Shown here in pieces: positions 9,160 through 40,649 of a stretch of 64,000 bases of DNA (positions are counted from its first letter, which is position 1; each line of letters begins with the position of its first letter). The stretch is taken from the NCBI RefSeq assembly GCF_002571385.2, contig NW_019217871.1, positions 186,062-250,061 of the forward strand. The letters run 5' to 3'. This DNA is from Stylophora pistillata (lineage: Eukaryota). The notes beneath the pieces are model-generated. The model ran no database searches and was not told the origin of the DNA. It saw nothing but the letters and a program-made list of their open reading frames with translations. Made by a program: the position numbers and the translations under genes.

Positions 9160-10662
9160 ATGACTCATATAACGATAAGGCTGGTGTCCCCGCCGTTTGG
9201 GAGTAGGAATATTCGAGAAATTATTAGAATCAAGACTCCGGAAAAGCTTCTACCGCTTGGGGATTCCAGTGGGAGTTTTTCTGTCGATACGGGAGGAAAG
9301 GTTGTTCATATGGCTGATTCAAATTACAAAGACAGCTGTAAGCAGGCAATGAACGGCAACTGTGAAGTTTTAAAACCTTATGATGGGTCTCCTTCAAATG
9401 TAGATGGAAACGAGAATGTTTGCGAGTACGTTCATGGTCATGTAAGATCAGAAGATTCAAAACAATTTAATTCTCTTCATGTAAACACAGAAAATTACAC
9501 AGAACTGAATGGAATGGCTGTGGAGAACAAAGAGAAGTGGACGAAATGTGCGGAAAATTTAGAGACGCATTGCGATACATGTGGATTGAGAGTTGAGCGT
9601 GAGGAGGTTGAATCAGAACTGTACATAACACGCAAAGATTTAGCGACTGTGCAAAGCCAGCTTGAAATGTTTAAACTCAGGCTTGAAGAGGAACTTGTTG
9701 AAAGATTTAAACTCGAGGAAGAGCTGAAATCTGAAGCTGAGTCCCACGAGAACGACTTGAAAATATTAAAGGAGAAAATTGATTTTCTGGAACAAAATGA
9801 AAGCGAAAAAACTTGGCGGATTGAAGAGTTAGAAAGCCAGATTGTGGTTTATAAAGAAGAGCACGAAAAAAGCTGGGAAGAGGTTGAAAGTTTGCGAAGT
9901 TTCGTTGGTAAATATCAGAATGATTTGAGTAAGGTAAGGGTTGAAGCGAACAGTGCAAGTGATCAAGCAGTTGAAGCCATCAACGAGATGGAATTGTTGA
10001 CAAAGAAAACGGAGAAAAACGAACAACAGAAAGATGAGATTAAAAAACAGATGAAATCGGAGATGGAAGGATACTGGAAAGAGGTGCGAGAATTGAGGAG
10101 TGTTTTTGAAAACTGGGAAAAGTTAGATTTCGAAAGGAAAACGCGCATTCAGACATTAGAAAACGAAGTTGCGTCTTATAAAAGCCTCGTGGATGAACTA
10201 AGAGAAAATCTGGCTGATGGAGACAACGGAGCAAGCGGGGAAAGGAGTAACGTGAAAACAGACTCTACCAAAAGTGAGCATTTGTTCAGAGTACTTTGTC
10301 AGGAATTGAACGAGGTCTTTAGGGAACATCTCAACAGCCAGGGAAAGTTTTCCGAGTTGTCGCTCGTTTTGGAAGCTACTCATAAGGAACTTGAAGAAGC
10401 GAGAAATCGAAGCCAGAGTCAAAACCAGACTCTGCAGCAGTTTAAAAGAAATTACAACGATTTACACGACGATATGACAGCGTTGAACGAAGAAAATCGT
10501 CATTTGAGGAAAAGTTTGGAGAAAAAGTGCGTGGAATTAGCAGATATTAGACGAAAGTTTCTCGCTTCAGAGACGCAAGTGTCTTGGCTCAAAGAAGCGT
10601 TAGATATTGTTGACAAAGCCAAGAAAAAATCAAGCTGTAAGCGAGTGCAATTAGCCAGTTAA
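9160..10662 (+). CDS. Uncharacterised coiled-coil protein with intronless CDS (~450-500 aa; start at ATG 9160 or 9310)
   Basis: 1.5-kb uninterrupted ORF, E/K/L-rich heptads over the C-terminal ~70%. Internal repeat EKTWRIEELESQIVVYK / ERKTRIQTLENEVASYK. AATAAA at ~10940. Confidence 0.75.
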   Translation: MTHITIRLVSPPFGSRNIREIIRIKTPEKLLPLGDSSGSFSVDTGGKVVHMADSNYKDSCKQAMNGNCEVLKPYDGSPSNVDGNENVCEYVHGHVRSEDSKQFNSLHVNTENYTELNGMAVENKEKWTKCAENLETHCDTCGLRVEREEVESELYITRKDLATVQSQLEMFKLRLEEELVERFKLEEELKSEAESHENDLKILKEKIDFLEQNESEKTWRIEELESQIVVYKEEHEKSWEEVESLRSFVGKYQNDLSKVRVEANSASDQAVEAINEMELLTKKTEKNEQQKDEIKKQMKSEMEGYWKEVRELRSVFENWEKLDFERKTRIQTLENEVASYKSLVDELRENLADGDNGASGERSNVKTDSTKSEHLFRVLCQELNEVFREHLNSQGKFSELSLVLEATHKELEEARNRSQSQNQTLQQFKRNYNDLHDDMTALNEENRHLRKSLEKKCVELADIRRKFLASETQVSWLKEALDIVDKAKKKSSCKRVQLAS

Positions 10663-12140: not shown

Positions 12141-12266
12141 TTTCAAAGCCCCTTACCACGTGACTTCATTTACATTCAGGGCCATTTGGGATACAGAGGA
12201 AGTCTTGGCTTTTGCAAGGAAAAAACTGTTGTCTCGATAACGTGAAGGTTTTTTTTTACTTTGCAG

Positions 12267-15200
12267 ATTTATTCGAATGAAGCGCATGGTAATGAAGTAA
12301 CAAAAAAAAATCGTTTTGAATTGCTCATGGAGAGAGTCAAGATGACAAAAGATCAGTTGCTGTTTTTATCCGCGGGTGGTCTGTTTCGCTCGCAACAGAT
12401 TCAGGTAAACATTGCCTTTTAAATGTAAAAATCGTAATATATCCCCAGTTCTCGTTTAAATACCGATGATAATATCCTTAGCACGCATCTGCTAGAGCAT
12501 CAACGATCTCGTTTGAATTATTTAATACCTCAAGCGCTAAAGAAGCCCTTTTAATTCTTTGTTTCTGGGCGATTTCTATGATTGTTGTAACAAAATTAAA
12601 TTCGTCTTTGTCAAGTGCAAATCCCGCGTGATTCAATCCCTTTGTGTTAATTTGTAGCTTTATTCTGGAACAGAAATGCTTCCTCGAAGTAGAATTTTAA
12701 CGTTGAACGTATCTTTCTGTTGTGTTTATTTTATTTAACACTATATTTTATCTGGGCCAATGAGTGTTTGAAACTTTGACATAAACGCCAATATTTTTCC
12801 GACGAACAAAAACATTACAGAATAGGGTTTTGTTTCCACGATTCACCAAACTTATGCAGGAGAAAAACGAAATGAAATGTCGAAACTAGTGGAGACTGTA
12901 TCAAACGATCGTGTATTGCAAAAAAAGATAAGTGTTTTTAATTGACTTTTTTAGCCGAAGTTTATCGCTTTCGTGGACTCTGTCGAATGCTAAACTCACC
13001 TGCTACCCCGTTATATTAATCAAAACAACCTATGCATCCTCTCAAAATGACGGTATTGTTTCCTTTCGTTGTGTGAGCTTTAGAATCGTGGATTCATGCT
13101 AAAATAAAAATTCATTTTGTGCCCAATGCTCGAGGTACTTATTTGACATATGTTCTCGAGTCGCCTTTAGAAGTCTGGGCATGTCAAAGGATTACCTGAC
13201 GTTTTCAGGCATTCAATGTAATGAAAAGAAAGGAAACATTTCCAACACTTTAAAACTTATCTAGGATATTAAGATTTCTTGGTGTTACACTGAAAGCGCG
13301 ATGAGTGTTGTTTTTACAGCTGAAAGTTAAAAGCTGAAAAATATTTGCAGCCCACAGTGTACTTACAATCCGGACTGAATTAATTTACAATGCTTTAGAA
13401 AGATATGAGTGAATATTCTCTATAATTCACCATGTGTGAGTCGACGACTTTTTCAGCACTAATCGATCATAAACAAGCTACGATCTTAAGAGTGTTCGAG
13501 AAGAAAAGTTTGCCCGCGATTTTCAAACCTGTCAGTGTGCAGATGGCGCCAGAAACGTATTTTATGACTCAGGGTAAATATTAAGACTGGTTATTCTTGA
13601 TATAGAATGATATGCAAATAGAGGCTATAGCAATAACTGGCTTATTTACTTCCTTGGAGAATTTTTACTTGACATAGATCCTTATCCTACATCGCTCTGT
13701 GATTGGTCCAAAAAAGTCGCCTACCAATGAGATGCAAAACTAAAACCAACCGCGGCTTGGCCGGGCGTATTTTCCCGCCCTTTTGGCAATTTTTACTTTG
13801 AGTTCTCAGTGGCTCCTTGCAGTATATCCTTTGCTCTGATTAGTTGGTGTAATTCCGTTGGATTTGGTTTTACGACACTGATTTCTGTCGACACAACTAA
13901 TCCAGCTAAATGGTTTGTACAGAAACTGTTTCCCCTGCTCTTTTAGAATTTCATCGCCCATAAATTTTGAACCACGTCAGTAGGCCAATACCGGCCAACA
14001 TGCATTACTAAATCTGGGTAAATGTTGTTTATTGTGAAATTTGAAATCTGTCAGTTTAGTGAACAGAAGTTGTCAACTGTAGTTAAGTCGGACCTGATGC
14101 TGGGAAAATTATATGTTTACACCAAGGATAATTATCACAGACCCGTAATTTGTTGCATAATTTAAAAGCTTTGACATAGTTTGAACGGAAGGGTACATGG
14201 TTTAGCTTCAAAGTGTTGAAGGAATTACAATATTCGTAACATCTTCTAGGTGCAACTGTAAGATTCGTAATAAACTTTGGTTGATTGAGGAATTAAAGCC
14301 TCTGACAGACTTGCTAAACTACCTGGATACAACAGAAAAATTTTAAAAAAATTCTATCATTTTTTTATTAGAGCTGTTTGTAAATAAGGCGGGAAAATAA
14401 TGCATGCTGATTGGCTGTCGGAATCATAAGCAAATCCACCAGCTTCCAATGAAGGAAAGATGATTCGGTAAAAGATTTTGTACCGAACTTATTTACCTTG
14501 CGGTTGATCAGACCGGACAAAAAATGGAAATATTGAGATTTTTTTCAGTCTTGTGGCATTCCGGCTCTTGAAATTTCTTTTTGAAGGGAAGTCTACAAGT
14601 TTGCATCGTTTAAGATGTTGATTTGACAATGTAATACAAAAAAGCTTTCTCATAGAACAGGTGAGCTTTATTTTAAGCATTAAAACCGAAAGATTGTTTT
14701 ATGTCGATTTCATTTGCACAGACCAAAGTAGAAACCTGTAGGCATTCAGTATATAGCCACCTTGTAAAAAACCAATCTCGTAAAATTTCTTTCCATTTCT
14801 CACTTGGTAATTTTAAATGTAGAAACATGCAATTTGCTCAGTTTGAATTTTTTCGACTTAAATTAAAATAATGAGTTCTATCTTTAGATTAAATCCGAAT
14901 CAAACTCAATCAAGGTTCGTGTGAAAACTGATATATTCCAAAGTTACTTATCTAAGAGTTCGGGGTGAACGAGGTGATTTCGCATTTCGTAAACTCATGT
15001 AACAATATCGACCGGGCCTTCTTAACAACAGTTTTTAGCTTCCTGAAATGATAGAAATGCAATGTTTTGTTGTGTGTTTTTGATTGAGTTCCTTCGTACG
15101 ATTTCTCTCAGGCTGCGATAAAAGGTTCATCTTTTATCGTATGCGAACGTTTTCAGAATGTGCATATTATGATTAAAATCAACAGGAAGTTTTCATGTAA

Positions 15201-15833
15201 ATCTTATCAACAGCATATTGTAAATAAACTCGAGCTAATGGACTTAAAGATTATTTTAAAAAATAGGTCAATTAATTATTTTAATTTTCTCCAACTAAAG
15301 TTTTAGAAGAAGAATTTTCATGCGTTACAAGGAAATATCAGTATCGAACAATTTTAAAAGCTGTATTAGAGAACAACCAGGTCGATTATGCAAACATACC
15401 CCAAAAACATGAAAATTCTACTACAAGAAGTATTTAAACAGTTTGCACTACTTAGACAAGATATTCGTTTTATTTACGCGACAGAATAATATTTGTAATA
15501 CTGAAGTTCTTTTTTTTCTTTGCAAAGTCTTCCAATTTTTTTCTTTTTATTCAAGATATTCATGGCTTGTAAACAATACCCCTTGCGGAGAAAATCCAAG
15601 ACGCTGCCGGTTTTTTATGACAATTCAAAACATGCGGTTTCCTTTCGGAATAATTAGAGGGTTATCTTTCAGGTCTGAAACCGCAAACTTAACGACGAAT
15701 TAAAACATGAATAATTTCCGACACCTATCGGTTACAATGCTAAAATAAAATAGTTGAGATTTTCTGCAGTTGATAAGGCTTAACTGTTTTATTTAACAGA
15801 GCCATCCCGAGCGAAGAGAGATCTCGTTTCATA
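12267..15833 (+). other. Candidate 5' UTR exons/introns of giant coiled-coil gene 1
   Basis: Acceptor TTTACTTTGCAG|12267 and donor CAG|GTAAAC after 12404. Alternative donor CAG|GTGAGC after 14660, downstream of a reverse CCAAT at ~14410. Acceptor TTTTATTTAACAG|15800 lies just upstream of ATG 15834. Confidence 0.4.
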
Positions 15834-18800
15834 ATGGAAAACAGAAGAGGTAAAGAGAACTTCTTGTTAGAAATTGAAAATCTGGAGCTTAAAGCAGCTA
15901 TAGAAGGAAAGGAGAGCATTATTCGCCAACTACAAGACGAAGTAAAAATTGTGCGGGAATCAAAAGAGACACGAATGGTGACCACTGAGCGAGTTTACCG
16001 TGAAAATGAGGTTCAAGAACTTCACAGCGCGGTACAGAGTAAGGAAATCGCTGTTAAACAACTTCGGGAAGAATTGACGGACGCTCATCATAACATCGAA
16101 CAGGTGTATCAACAATACGCACGCGCGAGAGGGGAACTAGAAGCGAAGGACGCCACGATCAGCAGGTTGCATCAAGAAAATGACAGATTGCAAGAAACAC
16201 TGGAGACAACCCAAAATGAACGTCTGCAAACGCTGGATAAACTCAGCGGAGTGCAAGCGGAACTCTCCGCGCTGCGAGTGGATAAAAATTGGTTAGAAAG
16301 TCAGTTAAAGTTTCAGCAACAAACTTCATCGTCGAAAACTTCACGAAGTTCTGTTGGCGGAACGACAACTTTCAAGGGTAGGGAAGAATTAGTCTTTACA
16401 ATGGAGAGTGTTTCGAAAGACCGACAGACTTTACAAGAGTTAATCAATACGGCTTCGCATTATGAGGAAATTATACGTAGCCTGGATAGTGGCAGACGAA
16501 CTGAGGGAGTTAGCCCACGTGAATCGTATCGATTTTCTTCCTCCGCTTCTTTAAGCCCACGACGAGGCGAAGGTTCGAACATTGACGAGAATTATGTGAT
16601 GGAGCTCGGCAGCAAAATGTCTGAAGTTGAAGAACGGTTACAAAAAGCTGTCGTATCGCAAAAGTACCAGCTGCAGGCTGACAGGGAACAATTAATTCAA
16701 GAATTTAAGAATATGCAAACCCAGCTTTTGCAACATCAAAGACACCATGAAATGCAAAAGAGTGAAATTTCATCGAAGGAGACGCTTGTACAGAGGCTTA
16801 AAGCTGCAAAAGCCACTTTAGAGACCGAGGTGGAAACACTCAAAAGCGATCTGGCAGCTTGCCGAGCAGAGAGCGACAAGTATTTACAAGAACAGAGAAA
16901 ATTTCGGCAAGATTTGACATCTTCGAGAAGTAAAATCTCCAAACTTGAAGCAGAGTTGGAGAACGAGAGACGGGAAAGAGAGATGGAAAAGCAAAGATCT
17001 CAAGAATTGAGCTCACACAGTCATACAGAGAGAGAAGAGTTATCCAAACTAAAAGTTCAGTTTCGAGAGCAGTACCTGCTGAACGAGAACCACATGAGAG
17101 AGATCGCTGCCAAAGATAATCTGGTCCGGCAGCTGCGAGAGAAACTGGAAGCTAGCGCGGTTGAGTTCGATAAGTTGAAGTCAACGCGCACTGCTACACA
17201 AGTTTCACAAACGGAAGTTGGACGAGACAGGGAAATTTTGCAAGAGAAACTTCTCGCCACGGAACGAAGGTTTGCCGAGTTGGAAATTTCCTACGAAGAT
17301 TGCCGACAAAAGAACGAGAGATTACATCGTGAAATGCAGGAATACAAACAGAAGCATTTCAGAGTCGATATTGTGGATGATTCACTTGAACAAAAGAAAT
17401 TGGACCTTGAAAATGAACTTGTAATTGCGCGCAAGAAGTTGTCGAAGCTCGAAAATGCATATGAAAGTTGTCAAAAGGAGAAGCTACAGCTTCAGCAAGA
17501 GTTAATACCGGCAAATACTAAAATGACACAGCTGAAAAACTCCTTTGAGAACTGTCAACAACAGAAGGCCCAATTACAACAGGAAGTCCTTTCCTCGCAT
17601 AAGCGGCTTGGCGAGTTTGAAGCTAAAACGGAGCGATATAAACAGGAGAAGGTGGAAATTCAGCGCGATGTGAAAGCTTTAGAAAACCGATTCAACAAAG
17701 TTGAGCAGCAACTTCAACGGACTCAGAGCGAAAAGCAAAGCCTGGTGGAGAAATTAGAAGAAGCCAATAGACGGCTGGTGAATGTTTCGGATGATGGTAA
17801 GAAAAGGGTTAACCAGTGGTACGACCAGCAGAAGAAGTTTGATGATCTTAGTACAGAAGTGCAGAAGAAAGACAAGACAATGCACCAGCTTAGAGACGAA
17901 AAGGAACTACTGGAAGCTGAAATTCAGAGATTCAAGCAAGATTTTGAGACGTTGAATAAGGAGCTCGCAGCCTGTCAGCGGGAAAAAGGGAACTTGCAGA
18001 ATGATTTGGCGATAGAAAGACAGCGAAACGCCGAGTTCGAGAAAGATTGCGAACGTCTTAAACAAGAACGAGAGAAGCTTCAACACGAGTTGAATTCTAT
18101 GAAAGAAAACAACGCACAGTGGAAAGATATGTGTGAAAAGATTCAAAACGACAAGGAAAGATTACAAGAGGAAGTGTTGGCGGCTCAAAGGAACATTTCG
18201 AGGTACGAGTCGAGCCGTGATAGCGAGAAACGAACCTCACAACAGGACACCATGGTATTGAAGACCAAGATAAGCGGACTTGAAAGTGAAATTCAGGAGC
18301 TGAGAAGGAATGAAGAAAGCTTTAAAACTAAGACAATGGAGCTTCAGAGGTGTAAAGTAGAATTTAGCAAATTAGAGAGAGAGCTTGAAGACGGCGCGAG
18401 GAAGTTCGAGCGCGTCACCAGAGAGAGTGAAACGAAGGAGAGTCTTGTGCAGCAGTTGAAAAGGGAGAACACTGCGCTTAAAAAAGAGCTGGACTCAGTG
18501 CTTGAAGAATCTGGTGATCATTCCACAAGTTATGTTCCCGACACAAAAAGTTTTGAAGTTGAGTTGGAATTACTTCAAAATCAACTCGCGGACACAAATG
18601 CGCATGCGAGAGAGCTCGAGGAGGACTGTGATTCGTGGAGACAAAAAAACCTGCAGCTCCAAAAAGAGATAGTTTCCCTCGATGCGAAGAACTCCGAGTT
18701 GGAAAGAGCATGCGGAAGATTACAAGAACAAGAAAGAAGACTACATCATGAGCTTGAAGGTTGTAGAGGTACTATTAACAAGCTTGAAAAAGAGATAGTG

Positions 18801-21800
18801 TTTCATCAGGAAAATAAGAGCAAAATAGAGAGCGCTTTTGAGAATTCAGAACTGAGAAAAGACGAGTTGTCAAGAGAAATAATCGAGGCACGAAAGAAGC
18901 TCTCGGAGCTTGAAAAGCTCTACGATGCTTCAAAGAATGAGGGTGAATCAACCAGAGAAAAGGATCGGGCAAAGATTGCAAAGCTTGAGACCCAAGTAGA
19001 AAATATGTCAAAGCAAAAACAGCAAATGCAGCAATTACTAGAGGAGACCAGAGATGCAGCTCGAAGATACCAAGATGAACTGCACAAGGCACAGACTAGA
19101 CTGCAAGAGTTGAAGAGGGACTCTGAAGTATACCACAAGGATATTCACTCTAAGGAAACACAAAACAAAAAGATTCGAGTGGAAAAAGAAACTATTGAGA
19201 GGGAACTTGAGAGCGTCCAGGTTCAACTGGTCAACACTACCTCTAGTGTGGAGGCGTTTGATATGGAGAGATACGAAATAATGCAAGAGATGCGCTTGGC
19301 CAAAGACAAGGTCCAGGAGTGGGAAAATGCATACAAGATGCTGCAACAAGAACACGAGAGTCTAGAGAAGGAACTAAGGAATGCTCAGAAGATGGTGAAT
19401 GAGGTGGAAAACGAGTTCAATAAAAGCCAAAAAGATCGACAAAATGAAATCCGTACCAATCATTTGAAGGTCAGCAAGTTTGAGTCACAAGTGCAGGTGG
19501 TTCTGAAACAACGAGACTCTCTGAAGGAACAGCTCGAGGAAGTTCGCGACGAGTTGAAGAAAACCAAAGACGATTACACACATCTGCAGAAAGAATTCAT
19601 CCAGCATCAGCAGAGATGTGATGCGTATCGAAAGGAGCTCTTAGCAAAGAGTCATCAGATTGATAAGGTAGAAGGCGAGAAAAACTATTTGATGAAGAAG
19701 ATGGAACAGATGAAACTTGAACTGGGACATAACGAAGTGACAGGCCAGGCTGTGAAGCAAAAGAGAAACATATTAGAAGACGATCTGCAGTCAGCTTGAG
19801 ATAGGATAACAGAGCTTGAAAATAATTTGGGCTCACTTCGATCAGAGAATGATGAGATTCAGAAAGACCTTTACCGTGTGACCAACAAGCTGACGACTGT
19901 AGAGGACTCTTACGCCAGGGCTCAAGAAAAAGTGAAGGATCTTGAGATACAGTTGGATGCTGCTCGTAAGGTCATTAGCGATCTAGAAGAAGAGCTATCT
20001 ATTATCAAGCACAAAGCTTCCCAGCTTGAAGCAGATCACGGGTACAAATTTGGCCAAATCGACGATCTGGAGGAAAAACTAGATGCAGCTCACAGGAGTT
20101 TGTCTGAGATCGAGTCAGCGTATGAATTCAGCGAGCGTGAGAAAGAAGATCTTAAACAACAACTTACACACGCAGAGAGGAAAGTATCAGAGATGAGGCA
20201 GACAATTCAGAGAAATGAAGAAGAAAATGATGATTTGGAAAGACAACTGGATAGCACTCGACATCGAACAACGAAGCTCGAAGGTCAACTAAATCAGGCC
20301 CAGAGGCAGAAGACGCAGTACAAAGAACAGTTAGAGGACGTTAGGGCAAAGCTGTTGAAATGCAAGGATGAACTAGGAACGATACAAAGTCACCTTTACG
20401 ACTGTCAACGAAGTTTAGATGCATTACGGAAAGATGCTTCCGGAAAGGACAACACCATAACAGAATTACGAGGAAAGTGCTTTTCGCTTGAGATGACGCT
20501 TGGACAGACGAGTGAGACGCTAGAAAAATATCAAACAGAGAACGATTTACTTCTACAAAACAAGCAAGATCTCCAAGTAGAACTTCTGCAAAACCAAGAA
20601 AAGTTCCAAGAACTTGAATGCATGTACAAGCTGTGTGAACACGAAAAGCAAAGACTAGAGGAAGAAATTCACTCGTTTTACAAAAGACTCGCTGAACTTC
20701 AAGGATCCTATCAAACGTGTGAACACGACAAAATGGACTCACAACGTCAAGTCATGGTTCTGGAGCAGAAAGTGAACAAGCTAGAGGCTGCTTTAGAACA
20801 GACTCAAAGGGAGAAAGCTTCCCTAGAATATCACTCCGGAGATTTAAATGTGTCAAACAAGAAGGCCGTCGAAGAATTGTCTGTTGTCAAAGTCCGATTG
20901 GAGGAAAATCAGAAATCAGTTAGCGAGTATTCAAACCAATTGTTCGAGAAGGAAAGAGTTGTCGAGGATTGCAAAGTGAAGATAACTACACTAATATCTG
21001 AAAATGAATACTTAAACTTGGAATTGACAAAGAAGAAGGAGCAAGTATGGCAGCTAGAAAATGATCGACGAAAGCTACAAGAGAAGTGGAGAGAAACCAG
21101 TGATGAAGTTATCAGGATGAAGCCATTGTGGGAGACTGCACAGCGTAAAAAAGATCAACTTGAATCAGAACTGCAAGCAAACCGAAAGAAGGTTGCAATG
21201 TTGGAATCTGACTTAAAGAAAAACGAGGAGAGGGGGAATCAGACTGAAAAAGAACTGACTATATGCAAGAGTAAATTATCAGACCTCGAAACAGAGTTAA
21301 ACTCTATGCGAAAAAAGGTTTCCGCGATGGAGTCGCATTACGAAGAGGCAAGAAAAGAACTGGAAGAGGTGCGAGAAGAGCTAAGAGCGGCGCAAGAGAA
21401 GAACACGAGTTATTCTATTCAGCTTGATACAGTTCAAGGCGAGGAGTTAGATCTCCGGCAACAAGTTGCGGCTCTGGAGAAGAATATAGAAGAACACGAC
21501 GAAGAAATCTCAAGTCTTCGTCAGAAGAAGGAGGCTTCAGAAGAGGAGGTTTTTGCACTACGGAACAGAGTGACACAACTGGAATCAACGATTCGTGCAC
21601 TGGAGTCACAGAAGCAGAACTTGAAAGAGCAACTCACCGATTCGAGGGACAAAACCGTGGAACTTAAAGAAGAAAATGTTAAGGTTGCAAGCCAGTTGAG
21701 AGAGCAACAAGGCTTGGCGCTGTCCTTGAAAAAGGCTCTTGCAAAGAAAGAGAAAACTATCGAGGAATTGAACGGAAGAATCTCTGGACTTGTAACAGAG

Positions 21801-33194: not shown

Positions 33195-36100
33195 ATGGCG
33201 AATTACGCACAAGAAAAAGAAAAAATCCACGAACAGCTCGAACTAGCCAAGGAAACACTGAACAAATTGAGGGCGCTTACTGATCCGAAAAGCGACTCGG
33301 AGAGTTTTCATAGTGTACCGAACGGTGGTGAATCATCCGCAATGAACGAACAAAATGGATGGGATGTTTGCCGAGAGCTCACCCAAGACAGCGACGAAGG
33401 AGCAAGCTCTGGAGTAGGAATGGAATCGCCAAATTTGGATCTAAGCCCACATGAAAGTACAACTTTTGTAGACGATGATAAATCACGAGTGGCGCCTGAT
33501 AGTCTGGTGAGAGTACTGGGTCTACAGGTATCGAAATTGGAGGACGATTTAAAAATATCTCTGTTGTCCTATTTTGAGCAAATGGAAGCCCAGAAAGAGG
33601 ATTTAATCTCTAGCTTTGAAATAATGCACGCGCAGCTTTTAAGGCATAATGAATCTTGTCAGCAACACCGTGACGAAGAAGCGGAGAAGGACAATTTGAT
33701 CGAGCGGCTGAAAGCTGCTAAACAAGCACTTGAACCGGATGTGGAGAAATTAAAGCGAGAAAATATGCTGCTGAAAACAACGGGAAATTCGCGCCCACGT
33801 GAAAATGGGATCCGTGGTTATCGAATAAAACCTGGTTATGTTGAACATGACGACCTCAGCGAAACGCTCATGAAAGAAAATTCCCGTTTGAGGGAAATCC
33901 TTCGTAAATACGAATCAAACGATTATGCTAGACTCGAAAGAAAAGTCGCTCTTCAGGAAAAGCTTTGCGAGTCTTATAACAAAGACATGAGCTCTAAAGA
34001 TAAAAAGCTTAAGCGCTTGGAAGCTGAAAACAAAGGTCTGCAAGAGGATGTAAAGAGCTTGCAAGAGGAAGTTTTGAGGGTGAATGCAACACGATTGAAT
34101 TCAGAGCACGATAAAACAAGATTACAGCAAGAATTACAGTTTAGCGAGGAGCAAATAAACACTTTGAGAGAAAAACTGAGTAGCTCTGAGCAAGAGAGTA
34201 GATATTTACAGCATTGTATAAGCGACGCAAATTCTCAAGCAAATGTTTCTGGCGATAACTTGTCTGAATTGGAGAAAGACATTTTGGTACTACGCGAGAA
34301 GTGCGAAAGTTATAGAGATAAGTTGAACGACAAAGAACGATTCCTTGAATCTGTGTGCAAAGAAAAACAAGGGCTTATCAAAGCGATGGAAGAGTTGAAA
34401 AGAGAACTGGCCGCTGTTCGAGGCGAGGAGCGATCACTGAAGATAGAAAACGAGAGATTACAGAAGGAAAACGCCGATAGTGAAATTGATCGTTTGAGTT
34501 CTGAAACTACGACTGAGGCCCAAGGAAGTACAATTTCTAAAATGAAGCAACATCTACACGAATTGCGGAGTAAGGTTGATGAATTGGAACAGCAAAAGAG
34601 ACAACACAATGACAGAGAAGCAGAGTTAAGTCAGGGTGTTCTCGCGAACTTAGAAAAATACACCCAAGTTGAGCAACAGTTGTATCTTGCTAAGAAAGAA
34701 CTCGCACAAATGCGCGGATTTTACGAGTCCAGCGAGGAAAAGAAGATAGATTTACAAGCAGAGGCTCAGACTTGTAAAGAAAGAATTTCAATTTTAGAAA
34801 GAAAGCTACAATCTAAGAAAATGGGCGAAGAAGACGAGCAACGAGTTAGCGATGTTGAAAAGAACGTGCAAGAACTGAACTCGGAAAATCAACGATTGAA
34901 AGAAGATTACGAAACAAGTAAGACGGAAATTGAGGAGTTGGAAGAAGCATTGCAAAGCGCACGCGAGCAGAATTCTTTGCAAAGAATGAGATTAGACGCT
35001 CATGAAACTCTCATGAAAAGGAAAGATGAAAGAATCAAAGAACTACAGAATGACCTTTTAGAGCTTCACAACCAAATGGATACCTTAACTGATGAAATCC
35101 TCAAGAAGAACCGTGAGCAGGAAGGTTTACGAATGGCGAAGATGTTGCTGGACCAAGAATTAGACCTACTGAGATCTGGAAAATTACCGGTGCGATCACT
35201 TCAGAAAGAAAGTGCTGCTAAAGATTCCTGGTCATTTCACCACACAGCGGGTCCGGCAAGTCCAGATAGCGGGTTTTCAGACATGGAGAGAGACAAAGCC
35301 ATTGACAAAATGAGAAGAGAAATTCTCATCCAAAACAAATTTCACCCTCAACAGCCCCCTTTGTTCGAGGAAAATGTGGCAACAAACGAGGACAGTAAAA
35401 CAAAAGCGGCTCTTGCACTAGAAACTCGCAGGCTAAAAGAAACCGAGAAGCGATTGGCGGACGTCATTGCTGAGAACGAAGAGCTTAAAGATCGTGATGA
35501 AGAAGCAAGGAGCATGCAACTTCAAATCGACTCGGAGCTTCGTAAGATGATGGAAGAAAACAACGACTTGAAAGAAAAGGAGAAGTTACTCACGCAAGCA
35601 TTGAAAGAAAACCACAGCATTAAATCACAGATGGAAAATTGCGTGGAACAAATTAATCCACAAATGGAGAACGATATTTTTCTTTTTGTCGACGAGCCGA
35701 TAGAAACAGCCATTTTGCAACCTGTTGTAGAAGCAAGTCTAGAGAACAGCATGGAATGTTCGGAATATGTACCTGATGGAACACTTGTGGATTTTTCCGA
35801 TGAACAAGATGGTCCTTCTATGAAACCTGTTATCGAAGGCGCTGATGTAATTCAAACCAAAGAAAGAGAGCTGGAACGTAAAGTTCGTGATTATGAAACA
35901 AGTCTGGCCAAGATGGCTAAAGAGAACGTCCGACTGTTGTCAGAATTATCAAAAACTCAAGATGACCTAAAAACTATGGAAGAAAATTGTAACTCAGCTC
36001 AGGAAAACAAAAACAATCTTCAAAAAATAATGCAAGAAGAACTCTTTGCAAAAGATGAAGAAGTTGCCAGGTTACAGAAAGAGCTGTCCACGTTATGCGA

Positions 36101-39100
36101 GGAACGAGAGGGTCTAAAATCCTCTGTAAATAGCTCCAAGGAAACAGGTCTTCACGTAGAAGAAGAGTTGTTAAGAGCTCAGACTATTATTCTGGATTTT
36201 GAAAGACAACAAGGGCTTTCACGTGAGAGAGAACAATCTCTGCAAGAACTACTTCATAAATCAGAAGAGAGCAATGCGAGTTTGCAGGTACAACTGAGTG
36301 ACGCGCAGAAACAGTGCCGACATTCCCAACAAGATGCCCAAAAGTTGCAGCAACAGATTCTTCATTTGCAACAAGGTTCTGTAGAATTGGAACAAGAGGT
36401 TAGTGATTTGCGAAAAATGCTCTCTGAGGTAACAGAGAAGAAGAGGGCTGTATCTGAACAGCTCGAGAAATGCTCCGATGCTCAGGAGAAGCTGCAAAGA
36501 GCACAAGAAATTATACTGGAACTGGAGAGACAACAGGAAATTTCACGCGACACAGAAGTATCTCTTAAAGCACATCTAAACCAGTCGGAAGAGAGCTATG
36601 CCAATTTGCAAGTTCAGGTGGGCGAGAAAGGAAGGGAGTACCAGAATATGGAACAAGAAACGGTAGTGTTACAACAAGAAATTGCCCTTCTTCAGGAAGG
36701 TTCTGCAGAACTGGAACGGGAAGTGAGTGAATTGCGAGAAAAGGTAGCAGAAGGAGAAGAGAATAAACAAAAAGCTTCTGAGAGTTCGAGAGATTTGCAA
36801 AAACAAAATGAAAACTTGCGAGAACAACTGCTTAAGGCGAACAACAGTTTAGAAACTTCAGAACAGGAAAATAGAGATGCGCTTTTAGAGCTGAAAGCAG
36901 ATATCAGAGAGAAGGAAAATCAGATTGAGCAACTTCAAGACGAGTTAAATCTCTTTGAACAACAATATAATGAAATTAGGTCGTTATCGAGCAACAATCA
37001 AACCGAGATTTCTGATCTTCGTGCGGGACTTATTGAAACCAAAGAGCAATTTTACACGGTTTCACAAGAAAAAGGAAGACTTCTCCATAGTGTGAAAGAT
37101 TTGGAGCACACCATTGCAGAACAAGACCAAATGATCCAAGCTTTGGAGTTGGAGAGGAAAGAAAATAAAAAGATCATGTATGAGAAAGAGAACAAAGTGG
37201 AAGATCTTGTTGATAAGCTTGAAGATTGTGAAAGTGAGAATAGTAAGTTAGAGGCAGAAAACCAACGTTTGAGAGAAAAGGTAGAAGAAGCCGCAGAAAC
37301 CCAACGGGAATTAGAACGATTACTGGCGGAGTGTAAAGAAGAAACGCGAGAATTTGAGCAGCAACTATCAGCAGCTCATGAAAGCATAACAGATTTGGAA
37401 ACAGCTTTCGAGAGAGGTGAAGACAAAAATGCACAAATCGGAGAAAACTTACGCGAGGCCAAAGAAAGAGTTGCAAAACTTGAAAATCAGCTGGATGAGT
37501 CGCTAAAAGAGCGTAGAGCGTTCGAACGAGATTACAGTGACGCAGAGAAGGACCTCGAAAAAGCACACGCGTCTTTGGATTCAAACAAGGAAAAGATTGC
37601 AGGTTTGGAGAAAAAATTGAGAACAGCAGAAGAGAGTATTGCAGAGCTTGAACTGGCCAGGGATAATGGATTATCAAACGAACAGTACCTACAGCAAAAG
37701 TTTGCAAATGCAAAGGAGAAAATTGACAAAACCGAAGCAGAGAACAATGACTTAAAGGAGAGACTCACAAAAATGGAGAAAAAATTCAACGATTCACTTT
37801 CCAAACAACAAGGACTTGCAGACAAGAAAGAAGAACTGGAGAAGATAAATAGTGAAATTTGTCATGAGCTTGAGTACGAAAGAGAACGACGTTTAGCTTT
37901 GAAACAAAAACTCGAAACCCGAGATAGAGACAATGAAGTTATTCAAAGAAAAGTGATTTTGTTGGAGAAGAGTAAAGCCGAGAATGAGGATATTCAGCTA
38001 AGAGACATGGAAGAAAAAACCAAGTTGCGCGAAGAATTAGCACGGACTAAAAAGCTCTTATCCGAGTTAGAAGCAACTGGAGAACATCAAGAGGAAAACA
38101 TCAACGAAATGGAAGATTCGTTAAGAGAAATGCGAGGGAAAATCGCTTCTCTTGAGCAGAAGCTGGAAGATGCTACACGAGATAATGCAGACTTACATGG
38201 TGAACTTGAAGAACTCAACCGTAAATTGAAATACGCGAAGGAAGAGAACGTAGAGTTGGAGAAACGGTTGCAGAAACAGAAAGAAATCAGTGATGAATTT
38301 AGGAATAATTTAGCAGAACGTGAGGAGAGCGCTCTGAACTCAAACTACAACCGCGACGCAGCCGAACGTGCCCTGCAGTCTGTGAAGAAGGATCTCGCGC
38401 GCAAAGACACCAAGTTGAAAATGCAGAAAGAACACATTGATGACTTGGAGAATGAGTCTGACAAAATCGGTAAGAAACTCAGGGAAACTGAGTCGTCCTA
38501 CAAGAAAGTAACTAACGAGAATGAAAGGCTTGCAAAAGAATTGGCCGACATTAAAGGCAAGCTAGCAAAGCTGGAGGCAATGTATAAAGAGAAAGCAAAC
38601 CTTCCGACGGATTCCGAAGTTGCAGTCGTAAGAGTCTCGGAATTGCAGTCAGATCCCGAGAGAGCTGATAAATTAATTCGAGACTGGTCTGACAAATTAA
38701 GCACCGCTCAAATCAAAGTAACCGACTTGGAAAACGAACTTCTAAGAGATATAAAGAAACACGAAATAAGGGTCCAGAGGACAACACCAGGAGCCAGGGA
38801 TTGGAGGAGAAGAAGCGTTGATAATTTGTCGGAGTACAGAAGGCCGAGCAGAGCACGACAGCGACCGAACAGGAGCCGAGACAGCTCCGTCGAATCACTT
38901 CGATCAACTCAGTCCATGTTCGACTTTTTCGACGAAAGTAGTGTACTAAATGACGACAGAGCACCCAGTAATTTATCAAGGGAGTCAGATAATGAAAGTA
39001 CGATTGGTATCCCTGTTGTGAATGTAATTCCCTACGACACTGTTACAGCTGAGAAGGTAAACATAAACTCTTCCAAACAAGGAAGTGCAGAGAAAGTGGA

Positions 39101-40649
39101 AGATAAGAACAGGGAAGTCTCTGGTGTTCAAATTAATAAACAAGCCAGGGAGGAAATCCCCGATACTCCAGCTACCGAGGACATTGTAGACAATATAGAG
39201 CCACATATTGATTTTACGTCACCAGTTGTCCTCCAAAATTCGCCCGGAGAGCAAACCGTGACAGCTTCACCGGAGATGACAGAAGATCTGTTCGTTATCA
39301 GTCAAGATTTACCAGATTTTCACATCGATTACGGCCACCCTGACGTCACTGAATCGCCAAGTGAAAACCACACTGTACAAGACCTCGCAGACGATCTGAT
39401 TGATGGAAATGACTTTTACATTGACTACCAACAAGCCCCAGTCAATGAGTCCCCACCAGGCAGAGCAATTTCGACACCTACGGCCAATGGTGTCCTTGAT
39501 TTTGGAATAGATGATACTTTTACCTCGCAGATCGACAATGAGCAGCCACAAGAATACCCACAACCACTTTTGATTGAACCACCTTCAGATGATCTGTTTC
39601 AGTTTGAGTCCCAGACCTCCTACACCTCAACCCTGACAAATGTAACAGACCTCACTTTACGATCACCAACCCCCCCTGTACTTTCCGAGCAAACACTGCT
39701 GGTGTCGTTTGATCCGTTAGATCTCCCAGAGTCTCAGACTCAACAAAAGAACAATCAAGAAATCCTTGATCCCTTCGAGGAGCTGATGAAAATGGGGGAA
39801 AACCAACTAAATGTCGACGGCAAAGAAACTGACATAAATGACGTTATCGACGTCACAGATGACTTTAAAAGCGAGGATGTGGACGTCACGAAGAGCGATG
39901 ACGTAGATGTTGTCGATGTTGTGGACGCCACTTACGCTAAACCAAGCAACAGCTCCTACGCCGATCACAACACGCTGGGTGACGTCATTAACTCGCCGAA
40001 AGAATCCGCCCCTGGCCCTTTCAACTTCATAGACACAAAGGTTGACTCAGGGCATGCAATCAACTTACCGATTAGAAGTGGCGATATCAATCACGTGACA
40101 GCCGCTGAGGGTAACCTCGCCAACTCTCTAGAAATAACTGAACCAGAACCAGTCCCAGTCTCTCGACCAAGAAAAATTAAAGACAAATTGAAACCTGTAC
40201 TGTTTCCACGAGGGAGCAAGAAGCAGAAAAAAGAGGCAGCAGAAACTCCTCCGTACAGTGTTATGATTATGGTAGACGATGTAATTGTTCCAGCGGCTCC
40301 AGACAAAAATTTAAGCTCTACTCGTGAGGAAAAGAAGAAGAAGAAGAAGAAGCAAAAGGCTGAGGCAATCAATATCGAGCAGGGGGAAGAGATTTTTAAA
40401 TCGCCAAGTGAAATAAGGAGAGAGTTGGAAGAGGCCAGTAAAGGAGCCCAGGTAACACAAACTACAGCTAAACAAAATGAACGAAAACAGAAGCAAAAAG
40501 TTACAGTTACTGAAAGCAAGTCTAACCAGTACTACATTGAGGAGAAAGAGAAAGAAAATGAAAGAGAAAAGAATGAAGTTGAAGATCAGGATGAGACAAT
40601 GGGAAAAGGAAGGCTTCAGAAATTAATTGCAGCTTTTGATAGGAAATAG
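33195..40649 (+). CDS. Giant intronless coiled-coil protein 2 (2484 aa), paralogue of 15834-30044, with ~620-aa disordered acidic C-terminal tail
   Basis: 7.45-kb open frame from ATG 33195. EDLISSFEIMHAQLLRH...KDNLIERLKAAKQALEPDVEKLK aligns by eye with EQLIQEFKNMQTQLLQH...KETLVQRLKAAKATLETEVETLK of gene 1. Confidence 0.88.
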   Translation: MANYAQEKEKIHEQLELAKETLNKLRALTDPKSDSESFHSVPNGGESSAMNEQNGWDVCRELTQDSDEGASSGVGMESPNLDLSPHESTTFVDDDKSRVAPDSLVRVLGLQVSKLEDDLKISLLSYFEQMEAQKEDLISSFEIMHAQLLRHNESCQQHRDEEAEKDNLIERLKAAKQALEPDVEKLKRENMLLKTTGNSRPRENGIRGYRIKPGYVEHDDLSETLMKENSRLREILRKYESNDYARLERKVALQEKLCESYNKDMSSKDKKLKRLEAENKGLQEDVKSLQEEVLRVNATRLNSEHDKTRLQQELQFSEEQINTLREKLSSSEQESRYLQHCISDANSQANVSGDNLSELEKDILVLREKCESYRDKLNDKERFLESVCKEKQGLIKAMEELKRELAAVRGEERSLKIENERLQKENADSEIDRLSSETTTEAQGSTISKMKQHLHELRSKVDELEQQKRQHNDREAELSQGVLANLEKYTQVEQQLYLAKKELAQMRGFYESSEEKKIDLQAEAQTCKERISILERKLQSKKMGEEDEQRVSDVEKNVQELNSENQRLKEDYETSKTEIEELEEALQSAREQNSLQRMRLDAHETLMKRKDERIKELQNDLLELHNQMDTLTDEILKKNREQEGLRMAKMLLDQELDLLRSGKLPVRSLQKESAAKDSWSFHHTAGPASPDSGFSDMERDKAIDKMRREILIQNKFHPQQPPLFEENVATNEDSKTKAALALETRRLKETEKRLADVIAENEELKDRDEEARSMQLQIDSELRKMMEENNDLKEKEKLLTQALKENHSIKSQMENCVEQINPQMENDIFLFVDEPIETAILQPVVEASLENSMECSEYVPDGTLVDFSDEQDGPSMKPVIEGADVIQTKERELERKVRDYETSLAKMAKENVRLLSELSKTQDDLKTMEENCNSAQENKNNLQKIMQEELFAKDEEVARLQKELSTLCEEREGLKSSVNSSKETGLHVEEELLRAQTIILDFERQQGLSREREQSLQELLHKSEESNASLQVQLSDAQKQCRHSQQDAQKLQQQILHLQQGSVELEQEVSDLRKMLSEVTEKKRAVSEQLEKCSDAQEKLQRAQEIILELERQQEISRDTEVSLKAHLNQSEESYANLQVQVGEKGREYQNMEQETVVLQQEIALLQEGSAELEREVSELREKVAEGEENKQKASESSRDLQKQNENLREQLLKANNSLETSEQENRDALLELKADIREKENQIEQLQDELNLFEQQYNEIRSLSSNNQTEISDLRAGLIETKEQFYTVSQEKGRLLHSVKDLEHTIAEQDQMIQALELERKENKKIMYEKENKVEDLVDKLEDCESENSKLEAENQRLREKVEEAAETQRELERLLAECKEETREFEQQLSAAHESITDLETAFERGEDKNAQIGENLREAKERVAKLENQLDESLKERRAFERDYSDAEKDLEKAHASLDSNKEKIAGLEKKLRTAEESIAELELARDNGLSNEQYLQQKFANAKEKIDKTEAENNDLKERLTKMEKKFNDSLSKQQGLADKKEELEKINSEICHELEYERERRLALKQKLETRDRDNEVIQRKVILLEKSKAENEDIQLRDMEEKTKLREELARTKKLLSELEATGEHQEENINEMEDSLREMRGKIASLEQKLEDATRDNADLHGELEELNRKLKYAKEENVELEKRLQKQKEISDEFRNNLAEREESALNSNYNRDAAERALQSVKKDLARKDTKLKMQKEHIDDLENESDKIGKKLRETESSYKKVTNENERLAKELADIKGKLAKLEAMYKEKANLPTDSEVAVVRVSELQSDPERADKLIRDWSDKLSTAQIKVTDLENELLRDIKKHEIRVQRTTPGARDWRRRSVDNLSEYRRPSRARQRPNRSRDSSVESLRSTQSMFDFFDESSVLNDDRAPSNLSRESDNESTIGIPVVNVIPYDTVTAEKVNINSSKQGSAEKVEDKNREVSGVQINKQAREEIPDTPATEDIVDNIEPHIDFTSPVVLQNSPGEQTVTASPEMTEDLFVISQDLPDFHIDYGHPDVTESPSENHTVQDLADDLIDGNDFYIDYQQAPVNESPPGRAISTPTANGVLDFGIDDTFTSQIDNEQPQEYPQPLLIEPPSDDLFQFESQTSYTSTLTNVTDLTLRSPTPPVLSEQTLLVSFDPLDLPESQTQQKNNQEILDPFEELMKMGENQLNVDGKETDINDVIDVTDDFKSEDVDVTKSDDVDVVDVVDATYAKPSNSSYADHNTLGDVINSPKESAPGPFNFIDTKVDSGHAINLPIRSGDINHVTAAEGNLANSLEITEPEPVPVSRPRKIKDKLKPVLFPRGSKKQKKEAAETPPYSVMIMVDDVIVPAAPDKNLSSTREEKKKKKKKQKAEAINIEQGEEIFKSPSEIRRELEEASKGAQVTQTTAKQNERKQKQKVTVTESKSNQYYIEEKEKENEREKNEVEDQDETMGKGRLQKLIAAFDRK

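What the first reader, a model, noticed from the sequence alone, without database searches (positions are those of the whole stretch)
9160..40649. Tandem array of three intronless coiled-coil genes, two of them giant paralogues apparently built by amplifying a golgin-160 (GOLGA3)-like module
Seen: same-strand CDSs of 1.5, 14.2 and 7.5 kb without introns, amid intron-rich housekeeping genes. Both giants share and internally repeat a module of form Q...E...(R/K)D..SK(D/E)..I..LK.....L..(D/E)V..L..E, e.g. QEQNILLESRKRDCASKEKTIEMFKAENTTLKVDVKSLQEE and LQEKLCESYNKDMSSKDKKLKRLEAENKGLQEDVKSLQEE. Recalled and unverified: this module and the N-terminal KDATISRLHQENDRLQETLETTQNERLQTLDKLSGVQAELSALRVDKNWLESQL resemble segments of multi-exon vertebrate GOLGA3. 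Inference: a retrocopy-derived, lineage-specific family of very long tethers or filaments. At ~0.15 nm per residue, gene 1 could span ~0.7 micrometre.
Basis: partly seen in the sequence, partly recalled or inferred. Interest (0 to 1): 0.75.

Follow-up and report, generated by a model that had tools for sequence, protein, structure and literature searches.

The report
Giant coral coiled-coil genes, not GOLGA3
Two neighbouring, very long rod-protein genes of the coral Stylophora pistillata are real and conserved in corals and sea anemones, but nothing ties them to golgin-160, and the larger one carries three premature stops in this reference genome.

Summary
Three same-strand coiled-coil ORFs exist: g0 (9160-10662), g1 (15834-30044) and g2 (33195-40649). 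The finding needs four corrections.

- **g1 is broken here.** It has three in-frame stops. Two are sense codons in 3 of 3 conspecific RNA runs. All three are sense codons in intact 4,720-4,726-aa orthologues of other corals.
- **g1 is not intronless.** A 5'UTR exon is spliced over a 3.4-kb intron.
It occurs once in g1 and once in g2. With a 122-column N-terminal head domain, it is all that specifically links them. g0 is unrelated.
- **g1's rod has closer relatives elsewhere.** It is collinear with six giant ORFs on another contig.

An exhaustive HMMER search and two word searches returned no protein named GOLGA3; every named hit was cnidarian. A paper states golgin-160 is vertebrate-only.

g2 is GenBank PFX28182.1 (hypothetical protein), with orthologues in Oculina, Porites and Nematostella.

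Best reading: hexacoral-specific giant rod or scaffold proteins of unknown cell biology. Retrocopy origin is unsupported.

The parts
9160..10662 (+). g0: a 500-aa coiled-coil ORF, unrelated to g1 and g2.
   Evidence: ORF. BLASTP against g1 and g2 gave nothing at E 1e-3. tblastn against the window and the C10 loci found only itself. Pfam gave only sub-threshold ATG14 and CCDC93 coiled-coil hits. The PDB search gave nothing. Expression and conservation were not tested.
12266..12404 (+). g1 non-coding 5' exon. Its 3' end is exact; its 5' end is the limit of alignment.
   Evidence: cDNA contigs L001, L002 and L003 of related corals align to 12266-12395 and then jump to about 15796. The window has CAG|GTAAAC at 12404/12405.
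12405..15799 (+). g1 5'UTR intron, 3,395 nt, GT..AG.
   Evidence: This is inferred from relatives' spliced contigs plus canonical splice sites in the window. It was not shown with this species' own reads.
15834..30044 (+). g1 coding frame: 4,736 codons in one exon. In this assembly it is broken by stops at 19797-19799 (TGA), 22002-22004 (TAA) and 26259-26261 (TAA).
   Evidence: Frame and stops. RNA contigs are collinear over 19650-25640, with no joints or indels, and read ACA and GAA at the first two stops; DNA run X1 keeps the stops. Orthologues L001, L002 and L005 have intact 4,720-4,726-aa ORFs with S, E and E at the three sites.
16485..16850 (+). g1 head domain (aa 218-339), shared with g2.
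   Evidence: BLASTP 34% identity, E 2e-11. hhalign 98.2%, E 6.1e-14, 122 columns. In this genome it is found only in g1 and g2.
18975..29189 (+). g1 rod region (aa 1048-4452), collinear with six giant ORFs on contig C10 of the same genome.
   Evidence: 288-964 bits and 23-29% identity over 2,049-3,528 aligned columns. aa 1177-3388 (nt 19362-25997) keeps one heptad register apart from short low-scoring gaps. Basic residues show a 14.0-residue period.
   Evidence: An HMM of the module built from g2 orthologues scores 41.3 bits here. The next best hit is 16.9 bits at the collinear place of paralogue C10_291k. The reversed-decoy maximum is 7.1 bits.
29490..30041 (+). g1 C-terminal non-coiled tail: PQ.TTLDI(D/N)V-type short repeats and a conserved end, ...SSFQV(F/Y)RD.KY.PV.FAL.EEE.GEYEIAQIES...RRRWKY.
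   Evidence: Alignment with L001, L002 and L005. It is unique in this genome. It has no hydrophobic anchor.
33195..40649 (+). g2: a 2,484-aa ORF, equal to GenBank PFX28182.1 (hypothetical protein AWC38_SpisGene7080, Stylophora pistillata).
   Evidence: ORF. 2432 of 2484 residues are identical to P0052, with one 52-aa gap. 33 relatives were found, 29 of them 2,416-2,850 aa long.
33387..33761 (+). g2 head domain (aa 65-189), homologous to the g1 head.
33912..34070 (+). g2 copy of the module (aa 240-292), highly conserved in 33 of 33 aligned relatives.
36054..36656 (+). g2 internal tandem duplication (aa 954-1046 and 1066-1154, 42-45% identical).
   Evidence: It is the only internal hit in g2 at E below 1e-6.
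38682..40646 (+). g2 C-terminal acidic, proline-containing, non-heptad region of about 650 aa. It ends in a conserved ...G(K/R).R..(K/R)LIAAF... motif (nt 40605-40646).
   Evidence: No heptad register from aa 1807 onward. 46 prolines in 654 aa. The end motif is conserved in 6 of 6 orthologues inspected, including Nematostella. Pfam gave nothing.

Best explanation
The window comes from the Stylophora pistillata reference genome. It holds two conserved, hexacoral-restricted genes for very long coiled-coil proteins, plus a third unrelated 500-aa coiled-coil ORF (g0).

**g1 (4,736 codons)**
- It has a non-coding first exon, a 3.4-kb intron, and then the whole coding sequence in one 14.2-kb exon.
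- The protein has an N-terminal head, a rod of about 4,200 residues (about 0.62 micrometre if continuous), and a conserved non-helical tail.
- The rod belongs to a family with at least six more giant single-ORF genes on another contig. It was built by old internal duplications phased on 28 residues.
- The reference allele is a null or decaying allele with three nonsense substitutions. Other colonies' transcripts and other coral genera have the intact frame under purifying selection.

**g2 (2,484 aa, GenBank PFX28182.1)**
- It shares with g1 only the head domain and one module of about 50 residues.
- Its coiled coil is segmented, and it ends in a long acidic disordered tail with a conserved LIAAF motif.
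- It is conserved from corals to Nematostella.

**Mechanism (inferred, not shown)**
- Both proteins act as parallel coiled-coil dimers that serve as structural rods or scaffolds.
- g1's register, unbroken over about 2,200 residues, and its 14-residue basic periodicity favour side-by-side staggered packing into filaments or bundles, as in myosin or paramyosin rods.
- g2's broken coil and disordered tail favour a flexible linker.
- The shared head would dock both proteins to the same partner or to each other.

Neither gene is a GOLGA3 derivative or a recent retrocopy.
For: **Species and g2 identity:** (2432 of 2484 residues identical to P0052; PFX28182.1).

**g1 expression and collinearity**
- 3 of 3 RNA runs give contigs collinear with 19650-25640.
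- Spliced full-length cDNA contigs of relatives exist.

**g1 stops are derived and polymorphic**
-.
- At 22 nonsynonymous differences, the window allele is derived at 9, the other allele at 5, and 8 are ambiguous.
- The window reads T where others read another base far more often than the reverse: 12 against 4 (X1) and 18 against 4 (X15).

**Purifying selection between species:** Ka/Ks is 0.08 (window vs L001), 0.13 and 0.15.

**Links between g1 and g2:** head homology and module homology.

**g1 rod**
- Rod family.
- Internal repeats: 10 seed motifs against 0.6 expected and 0 in the reversed sequence. 26 hits of at least 15 bits against a decoy maximum of 5.8. 33 chunk hits.
- Register and charge period.

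**g2 conservation**
- 33 relatives, the named ones being Stylophora, Oculina, Porites and Nematostella.
- g1-like and g2-like proteins of two distant species report the same longest-contig lengths, 438,474 and 173,885. This suggests the neighbourhood is conserved.

**No membrane anchor:**
Against: - Function rests on sequence features only. No localisation, cell-type or interaction data were available.
- The repeat HMM was trained on the sequences it then scored. Only the reversed decoys guard against circularity.
- The register and periodicity analyses are my own simple scripts.
- RNA libraries can contain DNA. Transcription in this species is therefore supported rather than proven, and the 5'UTR splice is shown only in relatives.
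- Stop 3 was not checked in conspecifics. The zygosity of the stops in the reference colony is unknown.
- X1 may be the very sample the assembly came from.
- Five relatives' ORFs (P0001-P0005) end within a few codons of the window's first stop. I cannot explain this.
Confidence: 0.7

Rival explanations
1. One reading: g1 and g2 are lineage-specific retrocopies of a golgin-160 (GOLGA3)-like gene, enlarged by amplifying a GOLGA3-like module.
For: - Each coding sequence lies in a single exon.
- The module and head are shared between the two genes.
- g1's rod is internally repetitive.
Against: - No GOLGA3-like protein appeared in the exhaustive phmmer search (22 hits; 10 of 22 looked up, all unnamed ENA or Logan; the other 12 are at most 148 aa). 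None appeared in the word searches either.
- Golgin-160 is stated to be vertebrate-only (PMC5896932, passage).
- The module is single-copy in each gene.
- g1 has a spliced 5'UTR intron.
- No parent gene with the head exists in this genome.
- The genes are conserved across Hexacorallia.
- More distant relatives' N-terminal ORFs stop early with junk tails, as if they had introns. That fits stepwise intron loss better than one retroposition.
Confidence: 0.03
2. g2, and perhaps g1, are golgins in the working sense: Golgi-anchored vesicle tethers. NCBI's name for the Nematostella orthologue, 'golgin subfamily B member 1' (giantin), hints at this.
For: - The name given to XP_032225115.2.
- The size, and a segmented coiled coil with a disordered end.
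- A conserved extreme C-terminal motif that could be a targeting signal.
Against: - There is no C-terminal transmembrane segment in g2 or in 5 of 5 orthologues inspected. The maximum 19-residue hydropathy is 1.09 or less, and never near the end.
- No GRIP, GRAB, GM130 or Golgin_A5 Pfam family appears at E 0.01 or better.
- The NCBI name is automatic.
Confidence: 0.12
3. g1 is simply a dead gene (a unitary pseudogene) in Stylophora pistillata, so the 14.2-kb frame has no present function in this species.
For: - There are three nonsense codons in the assembly, and two of them are also in DNA run X1.
- The window allele has an excess of derived nonsynonymous changes and of changes to T.
Against: - There are no frameshifts in 14.2 kb.
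- 3 of 3 RNA runs from two studies carry sense codons at stops 1 and 2.
- Variants private to those runs are about half synonymous: 9 synonymous to 8 nonsynonymous by my count.
- Orthologues are under strong constraint.
Confidence: 0.07
4. The three stops are assembly or base-calling errors, and the reference colony's gene is intact.
For: The window differs from DNA run X1 at 22 places in 5,991 bases. Several window-private letters give odd residues (W, C, L) at conserved positions.
Against: X1's contig (mean word depth 25.9) carries the same letters as the window at 19797, 19798 and 22002. X1 may, however, be the data behind the assembly.
Confidence: 0.08

Closest known systems
Giant coiled-coil ORFs on contig C10 of the same genome.
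   Same: g1's rod (aa 1048-4452) is collinear with six ORFs of 2,362-3,662 aa, at 288-964 bits. The closest of them has a weak copy of the module at the matching place. The coding sequences lie in giant open frames.
   Different: The C10 ORFs lack g1's head and tail. Only one has a weak 60-aa match to the head's second half. g2 does not hit them at E 1e-10.
Giantin (GOLGB1), the name NCBI gives the Nematostella orthologue of g2.
   Same: A very long, segmented coiled-coil protein of similar size.
   Different: There is no C-terminal membrane anchor. The name is automatic, and no specific sequence link was tested or seen.
Golgin-160 (GOLGA3).
   Same: A non-coiled N-terminal head followed by a long coiled coil (general architecture, recalled).
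   Different: It is reported only from vertebrates (PMC5896932). It was not found by any search here. As I recall, it is about 1,500 aa and multi-exon.
Myosin II and paramyosin rods.
   Same: Long heptad runs with few register breaks, and a charge periodicity on a 14/28-residue grid. The 28-residue repeat of myosin rods is recalled knowledge.
   Different: There is no motor domain. No Myosin_tail Pfam hit appears at E 0.01 or better. The dominant period here is 14 residues, not 28 or 28/3. Assembly is untested.
Rootletin and C-Nap1 (CROCC, CEP250).
   Same: Fibre-forming long coiled coils without membrane anchors (recalled).
   Different: There is no Rootletin Pfam hit. None of the named search hits was a non-cnidarian protein. 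g1 is more than twice as long.

Membership tests
Golgin-160 (GOLGA3) | Detectable sequence similarity of the N-terminal segment to GOLGA3. | tested here: not met
   phmmer of g1 aa 1-422 against 1.84 billion representatives gave 22 hits at E 0.001 or better. The longest are 1,320 aa (a coral protein) and 1,062 aa (a repeat protein). 10 of the 22 were looked up and all come from ENA or Logan without names. The remaining 12 are at most 148 aa. No GOLGA3 sequence was available from a tool for a direct comparison.
Golgin-160 (GOLGA3) | Similarity of the repeated 'module' to GOLGA3. | tested here: inconclusive
   A word search with g2 aa 70-420 (length window 1,366-4,345 aa) gave 33 hits at E 1 or better, and the 4 named ones are all cnidarian. 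Only the 8,000 candidates sharing most words were scored, so a weak relative could have been missed.
Golgin-160 (GOLGA3) | Taxonomic range. | tested here: not met
   PMC5896932 introduction: 'Found only in vertebrates' (passage read). The genes here are cnidarian.
Golgin-160 (GOLGA3) | ARF1-dependent Golgi binding by the head, and dynein recruitment. | not testable with these tools
   These are functional properties described in PMC5896932 and PMC6611411 (passages).
Processed retrogene | No introns in the whole transcription unit. | tested here: not met
   g1 has a spliced 5'UTR intron, 12405-15799. g2's UTRs were not examined.
Processed retrogene | An intron-bearing parent gene in the genome. 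| tested here: not met
   A six-frame search of the whole 398-Mb assembly with g1 aa 1-422 found only g1 and g2 (2 matches among 86 scored candidates).
Processed retrogene | A poly(A) remnant and target-site duplications. | not tested
   These are not expected to survive at this age, and I did not look for them.
Giantin (GOLGB1) | A C-terminal transmembrane tail anchor. | tested here: not met
   The maximum 19-residue Kyte-Doolittle mean is 1.04 in g2, at aa 828. The C-termini of 6 of 6 sequences inspected are hydrophilic.
GRIP, GRAB, GM130 and golgin-84 type golgins | The family's Pfam targeting domain. | tested here: not met
   None of these is listed at E 0.01 or better in 6 of 6 pieces scanned. 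C-terminal pieces rescanned at E 10 or better also gave none.
Hexacoral giant coiled-coil rod family (contig C10 paralogues) | Collinear similarity over thousands of residues, well above generic coiled-coil scores. | tested here: met
   For g1: 288-964 bits against six ORFs, compared with 37 bits for the best rod-to-rod match of g1 against g2. For g2 this is not met at E 1e-10.
Filament-forming rods of the myosin or paramyosin kind (works like, not membership) | A regular charge periodicity on an unbroken heptad frame. | tested here: inconclusive
   In g1 aa 1048-3765, basic residues give a power of 40.4 at period 14.0 (a random sequence gives about 1). One register holds over aa 1177-3388. 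These are my own scripts. Assembly itself is untested.

The most novel reading that the evidence does not exclude
g1 and its six C10 paralogues form a hexacoral-specific cytoskeletal filament system. The rods would be up to about 0.6 micrometre long, with more than 2,000 residues in one heptad register and a 14-residue basic stripe. They would pack side by side like myosin or paramyosin rods. The g1/g2 head domain would couple that system to the g2 scaffold. The reference colony would tolerate a null g1 allele because paralogues back it up.
Probability: 0.15. Interest if true: 0.7.

Novelty: new member of a known kind. Interest (0 to 1): 0.4.

Why it matters
- These are among the longest predicted coiled-coil proteins in animals. 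They are conserved across reef corals and sea anemones, yet they are annotated only as hypothetical, or with a borrowed golgin name.
- Knowing that they are a cnidarian family of their own, and not GOLGA3 copies, stops a wrong annotation from spreading.
- It also points to testable cell biology in Nematostella: where the rods sit, whether they form filaments, and what the shared head binds.
- The three nonsense codons in the reference allele are a caution for anyone who uses the S. pistillata reference to model this gene.

Tried and rejected
**Searches that gave nothing useful**
- Pfam on all pieces and on the tails gave only generic coiled-coil families.
- PF24161, shown as precomputed on relatives, turned out to be the CCDC39 coiled-coil family, and its true gene lies on another contig.
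- PDB sequence searches of the g1 head, the g2 head and g0 gave nothing meaningful.
- The ESM Atlas, queried with the stored homologue P0009, gave only generic coiled-coil clusters.
- A word search with g1 piece 2 found nothing. This says little, because the length window excludes full-length relatives.
- A CC1-box (dynein adaptor) reading of the N-terminal 'AAVEG' was rejected by eye, because the residues are not conserved in A1 and A2. The motif itself is recalled.
- A mini-intron explanation for the stops was rejected. RNA contigs show no letters left out, and candidate GT..AG stretches are 10-15 nt.

**Analyses with problems**
- My first self-BLAST returned no internal hits. This was an artefact of BLAST discarding contained matches. 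replace it.
- The Ka/Ks rows involving L004 are invalid, because my alignment step mis-registered the codons. They are not used.

**Paper searches that found nothing**
- Gene and accession identifiers: 0 papers each.
- intronless + coiled-coil + Nematostella + giant: 0 papers.
- 'golgin subfamily B member' + coral gave 5 papers. I saw only the listing and did not follow them.
- Supplements were not asked for. Cell-atlas supplements for S. pistillata or Nematostella may hold cell-type expression for these genes.

Full report
**What is in the sequence**

- The window has three long open frames on the + strand:
  - g0: 9160-10662, 500 aa from the first ATG.
  - g1: 15834-30044, 4,736 codons.
  - g2: 33195-40649, 2,484 aa.
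- All three are rich in E, L, K, Q and S, and their coding strand is purine-rich.
- Pfam gives only generic coiled-coil families such as CENP-F_leu_zip, ATG16, Tropomyosin and Rod_CreS. No golgin targeting domain appears.
- Hydrophobic residues follow a heptad rhythm far above shuffled controls. The 4,200-residue g1 rod holds only 5 prolines.

**The g1 frame is not open in this assembly**

- It is cut by TGA at 19797, TAA at 22002 and TAA at 26259, all in frame and with no frameshift. An earlier first-stage note (s1-771610) says the same.
- I laid contigs of three RNA runs (two studies) and one DNA run on 19650-25640.
  - RNA contigs of 1.9-8.1 kb lie collinear with the genome, with no joints and no inserted or missing letters.
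  - All three RNA runs read A and C at 19797/19798 (ACA, Thr) and G at 22002 (GAA, Glu).
  - DNA run X1 keeps the window's letters. X1 differs from the window at 22 other places and may be the reference sample.
- Metagenome contigs of related corals carry uninterrupted ORFs of 4,720, 4,726 and 4,720 aa (L001, L002, L005). A fourth (L004) has an open stretch of 4,676 aa. They are 74% identical to g1 and read S/G, E and E at the three sites.
- Ka/Ks is 0.08 between the window and L001, and 0.13-0.15 among the relatives. The L004 rows of that call are invalid.
- Of the 40 differences listed out of 70, 23 change the protein.
- Polarised with the outgroups, the window allele is derived at 9 nonsynonymous sites, the other allele at 5, and 8 are ambiguous.
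- The window reads T where others read another base 12 times against 4 the other way (X1), and 18 against 4 (X15). That is the direction expected if a T-poor coding strand drifts without selection.
- I conclude that the reference carries a null, probably decaying, allele of a gene that is intact and constrained elsewhere. Its zygosity is unknown.

**Gene structure**

- L001, L002 and L003 are spliced cDNAs. About 120-130 nt of each aligns to window 12266-12395, and the next base aligns to about 15796.
- The window has CAG|GTAAAC at 12404/12405 and TTTAACAG|AG at 15799/15800.
- So g1 has a non-coding first exon and a 3,395-nt intron. Only its coding sequence is intronless.
- L004 and L006 align to the intron just upstream of the big exon, so they are genomic. 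L004's frame is unbroken.
- More distant relatives' N-terminal ORFs end at about 370-430, 790-825 or 1,320 aa, with unrelated tails.
- One point is unexplained. Five such ORFs (P0001-P0005) end within a few codons of the window's first stop.

**How g1 and g2 are related**

- BLASTP finds one specific match: g1 aa 226-337 with g2 aa 83-187, at 34% identity and E 2e-11. The rod regions reach only 37 bits.
- Profiles built from orthologues confirm a shared head domain (98.2%, E 6.1e-14, 122 columns).
- A six-frame search of the whole 398-Mb assembly finds the head only in g1 and g2.
  - g2 aa 246-292 and g1 aa 2678-2724 give each other their best local score (109). The maximum of 100 shuffles is 86, and the reversed sequence gives 76.
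  - The profiles match at 97.0%, E 9.3e-11, with a reversed control of 0.1%.
  - It is present once per gene. The strict motif occurs twice in g1 and once in g2. No other place in g1 beats the reversed control.
- g0 matches neither gene.

**What g1's rod is made of, and its real relatives**

- The rod carries a directional motif, roughly LQxEL...K(L/V)xxLExxYExCxxEK.
  - There are 10 seed matches, against 0.6 expected and none in the reversed sequence.
  - After three rounds of a small HMM, there are 26 matches of at least 15 bits in g1 and 3 in g2. The reversed-decoy maximum is 5.8 bits. This model was trained on the same sequences it scored.
  - Neighbouring copies sit 28, 56 or 84 residues apart.
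- Chunk-against-rest BLAST gives 33 internal matches in g1. In g2 it gives only one tandem duplication, aa 954-1046 and 1066-1154.
  - That search found twelve matches.
  - Six giant ORFs on contig C10 (2,362-3,662 aa) are collinear with g1 aa 1048-4452. Scores are 288-964 bits at 23-29% identity.
  - The closest paralogue has a weak copy of the module exactly at the collinear place: 16.9 bits, against a decoy maximum of 7.1.
  - g2 and g0 do not hit these ORFs at E 1e-10.
- So g1 is a member of a giant rod family, while g2 shares only the head and the module.

**The GOLGA3 idea**

It gave 22 hits.
- I looked up 10 of them. All come from unnamed ENA or Logan assemblies. The other 12 are at most 148 aa.
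- The same region in the word search, with a length window of 727-2,312 aa, gave 6 coral proteins.
- g2 aa 70-420, with a window of 1,366-4,345 aa and E up to 1, gave 33 proteins. The four named ones are Stylophora, Oculina, Porites and Nematostella.
- PMC5896932 says golgin-160 is 'found only in vertebrates' (passage). PMC6611411 describes its roles (passages).
- No tool supplied a GOLGA3 sequence, so a direct alignment was not possible. The module test is therefore weaker than the head test.

**Identity and spread**

- g2 equals GenBank PFX28182.1 (hypothetical protein AWC38_SpisGene7080, Stylophora pistillata), apart from a 52-aa gap. The window is therefore from that reference genome.
- The gap is a predicted in-frame GT..AG 'intron' (33507-33662) that removes part of the conserved head. 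The RefSeq models of Oculina and Nematostella keep that part.
- The Nematostella orthologue, XP_032225115.2, is named 'golgin subfamily B member 1'. Neither it nor g2 has a hydrophobic tail anchor.
- g1-like and g2-like proteins of two distant species report identical longest-contig lengths. This suggests the neighbourhood is old.
- No paper in the library mentions these identifiers.

**Physical features and likely working**

- In g1, aa 1177-3388 keeps one heptad register apart from short low-scoring gaps.
- In aa 1048-3765, basic residues show a sharp 14.0-residue period, with power 40.4 against about 1 for a random sequence. Paralogue C10_291k shows it too, and g2 does not.
- The g1 tail has short PQ.TTLDI(D/N)V-type repeats and a conserved end. 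It is unique in the genome.
- g2's coil changes register often and has breaks. Its last 650 residues or so are acidic and proline-bearing, and it ends in a conserved LIAAF motif.
- From these features I infer, but have not shown, two things.
  - g1-type proteins are stiff rods that could pack laterally.
  - g2 is a more flexible scaffold, and the shared head links the two to a common partner.

**Limits**

- Supplements were not consulted.
- g0's expression and conservation, g2's UTR structure and the neighbouring genes were not examined.

Noticed in passing
window 33507-33662: The GenBank model of g2 (PFX28182.1) removes 156 nt (52 aa) as an in-frame GT..AG intron inside the conserved head domain. 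The Porites evermanni model does much the same. The RefSeq models of Oculina and Nematostella keep the stretch, so this is probably a gene-finder artefact.
   Followed up: partly
window 19780-19800; proteins P0001-P0005 (alignment A1): Five relatives' ORFs of 1,318-1,347 aa end within a few codons upstream of the window's first stop. Two end at once and three run into unrelated, T-rich-looking tails. Other relatives (L001-L005) read straight through. The cause could be an intron, an insertion or a coincidence. It is unexplained.
   Followed up: partly
window 19650-25640: The reference allele reads T on the coding strand where other samples read A, G or C much more often than the reverse (12 against 4 for X1, 18 against 4 for X15). 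All three stops begin with such a T.
   Followed up: partly
window 12340-12360; L001 about 610-630: The g1 5'UTR exon holds a short upstream ATG (ATGACAAAAGA.CAGTTG) that is conserved between the window and the three cDNA contigs of relatives.
   Followed up: no
window 19362-25997 (g1 aa 1177-3388): About 2,200 residues lie in a single heptad register, with a 14-residue periodicity of basic residues. This is unusually regular for so long a coiled coil.
   Followed up: partly
window 40605-40646: The extreme C-terminus of g2 (...GKGRLQKLIAAFDRK) is conserved from Stylophora to Nematostella. It matches no Pfam family.
   Followed up: partly
G000 contig C10, about 59.8-67.3 kb and 295-402 kb: A cluster of six giant open frames (2,362-3,662 aa), plus a 474-aa fragment, is related to g1's rod. 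They lie on both strands within about 350 kb.
   Followed up: partly
protein P0049 (1,374 aa, unnamed ENA contig): This coiled-coil protein is built of repeats of about 90 residues. It weakly matches the second half of the g1 head and has a Ser/Thr-rich tail. Its origin is unknown.
   Followed up: no
window 61254-61815: A run of 562 N (an assembly gap or masked stretch). I left it alone.
   Followed up: no
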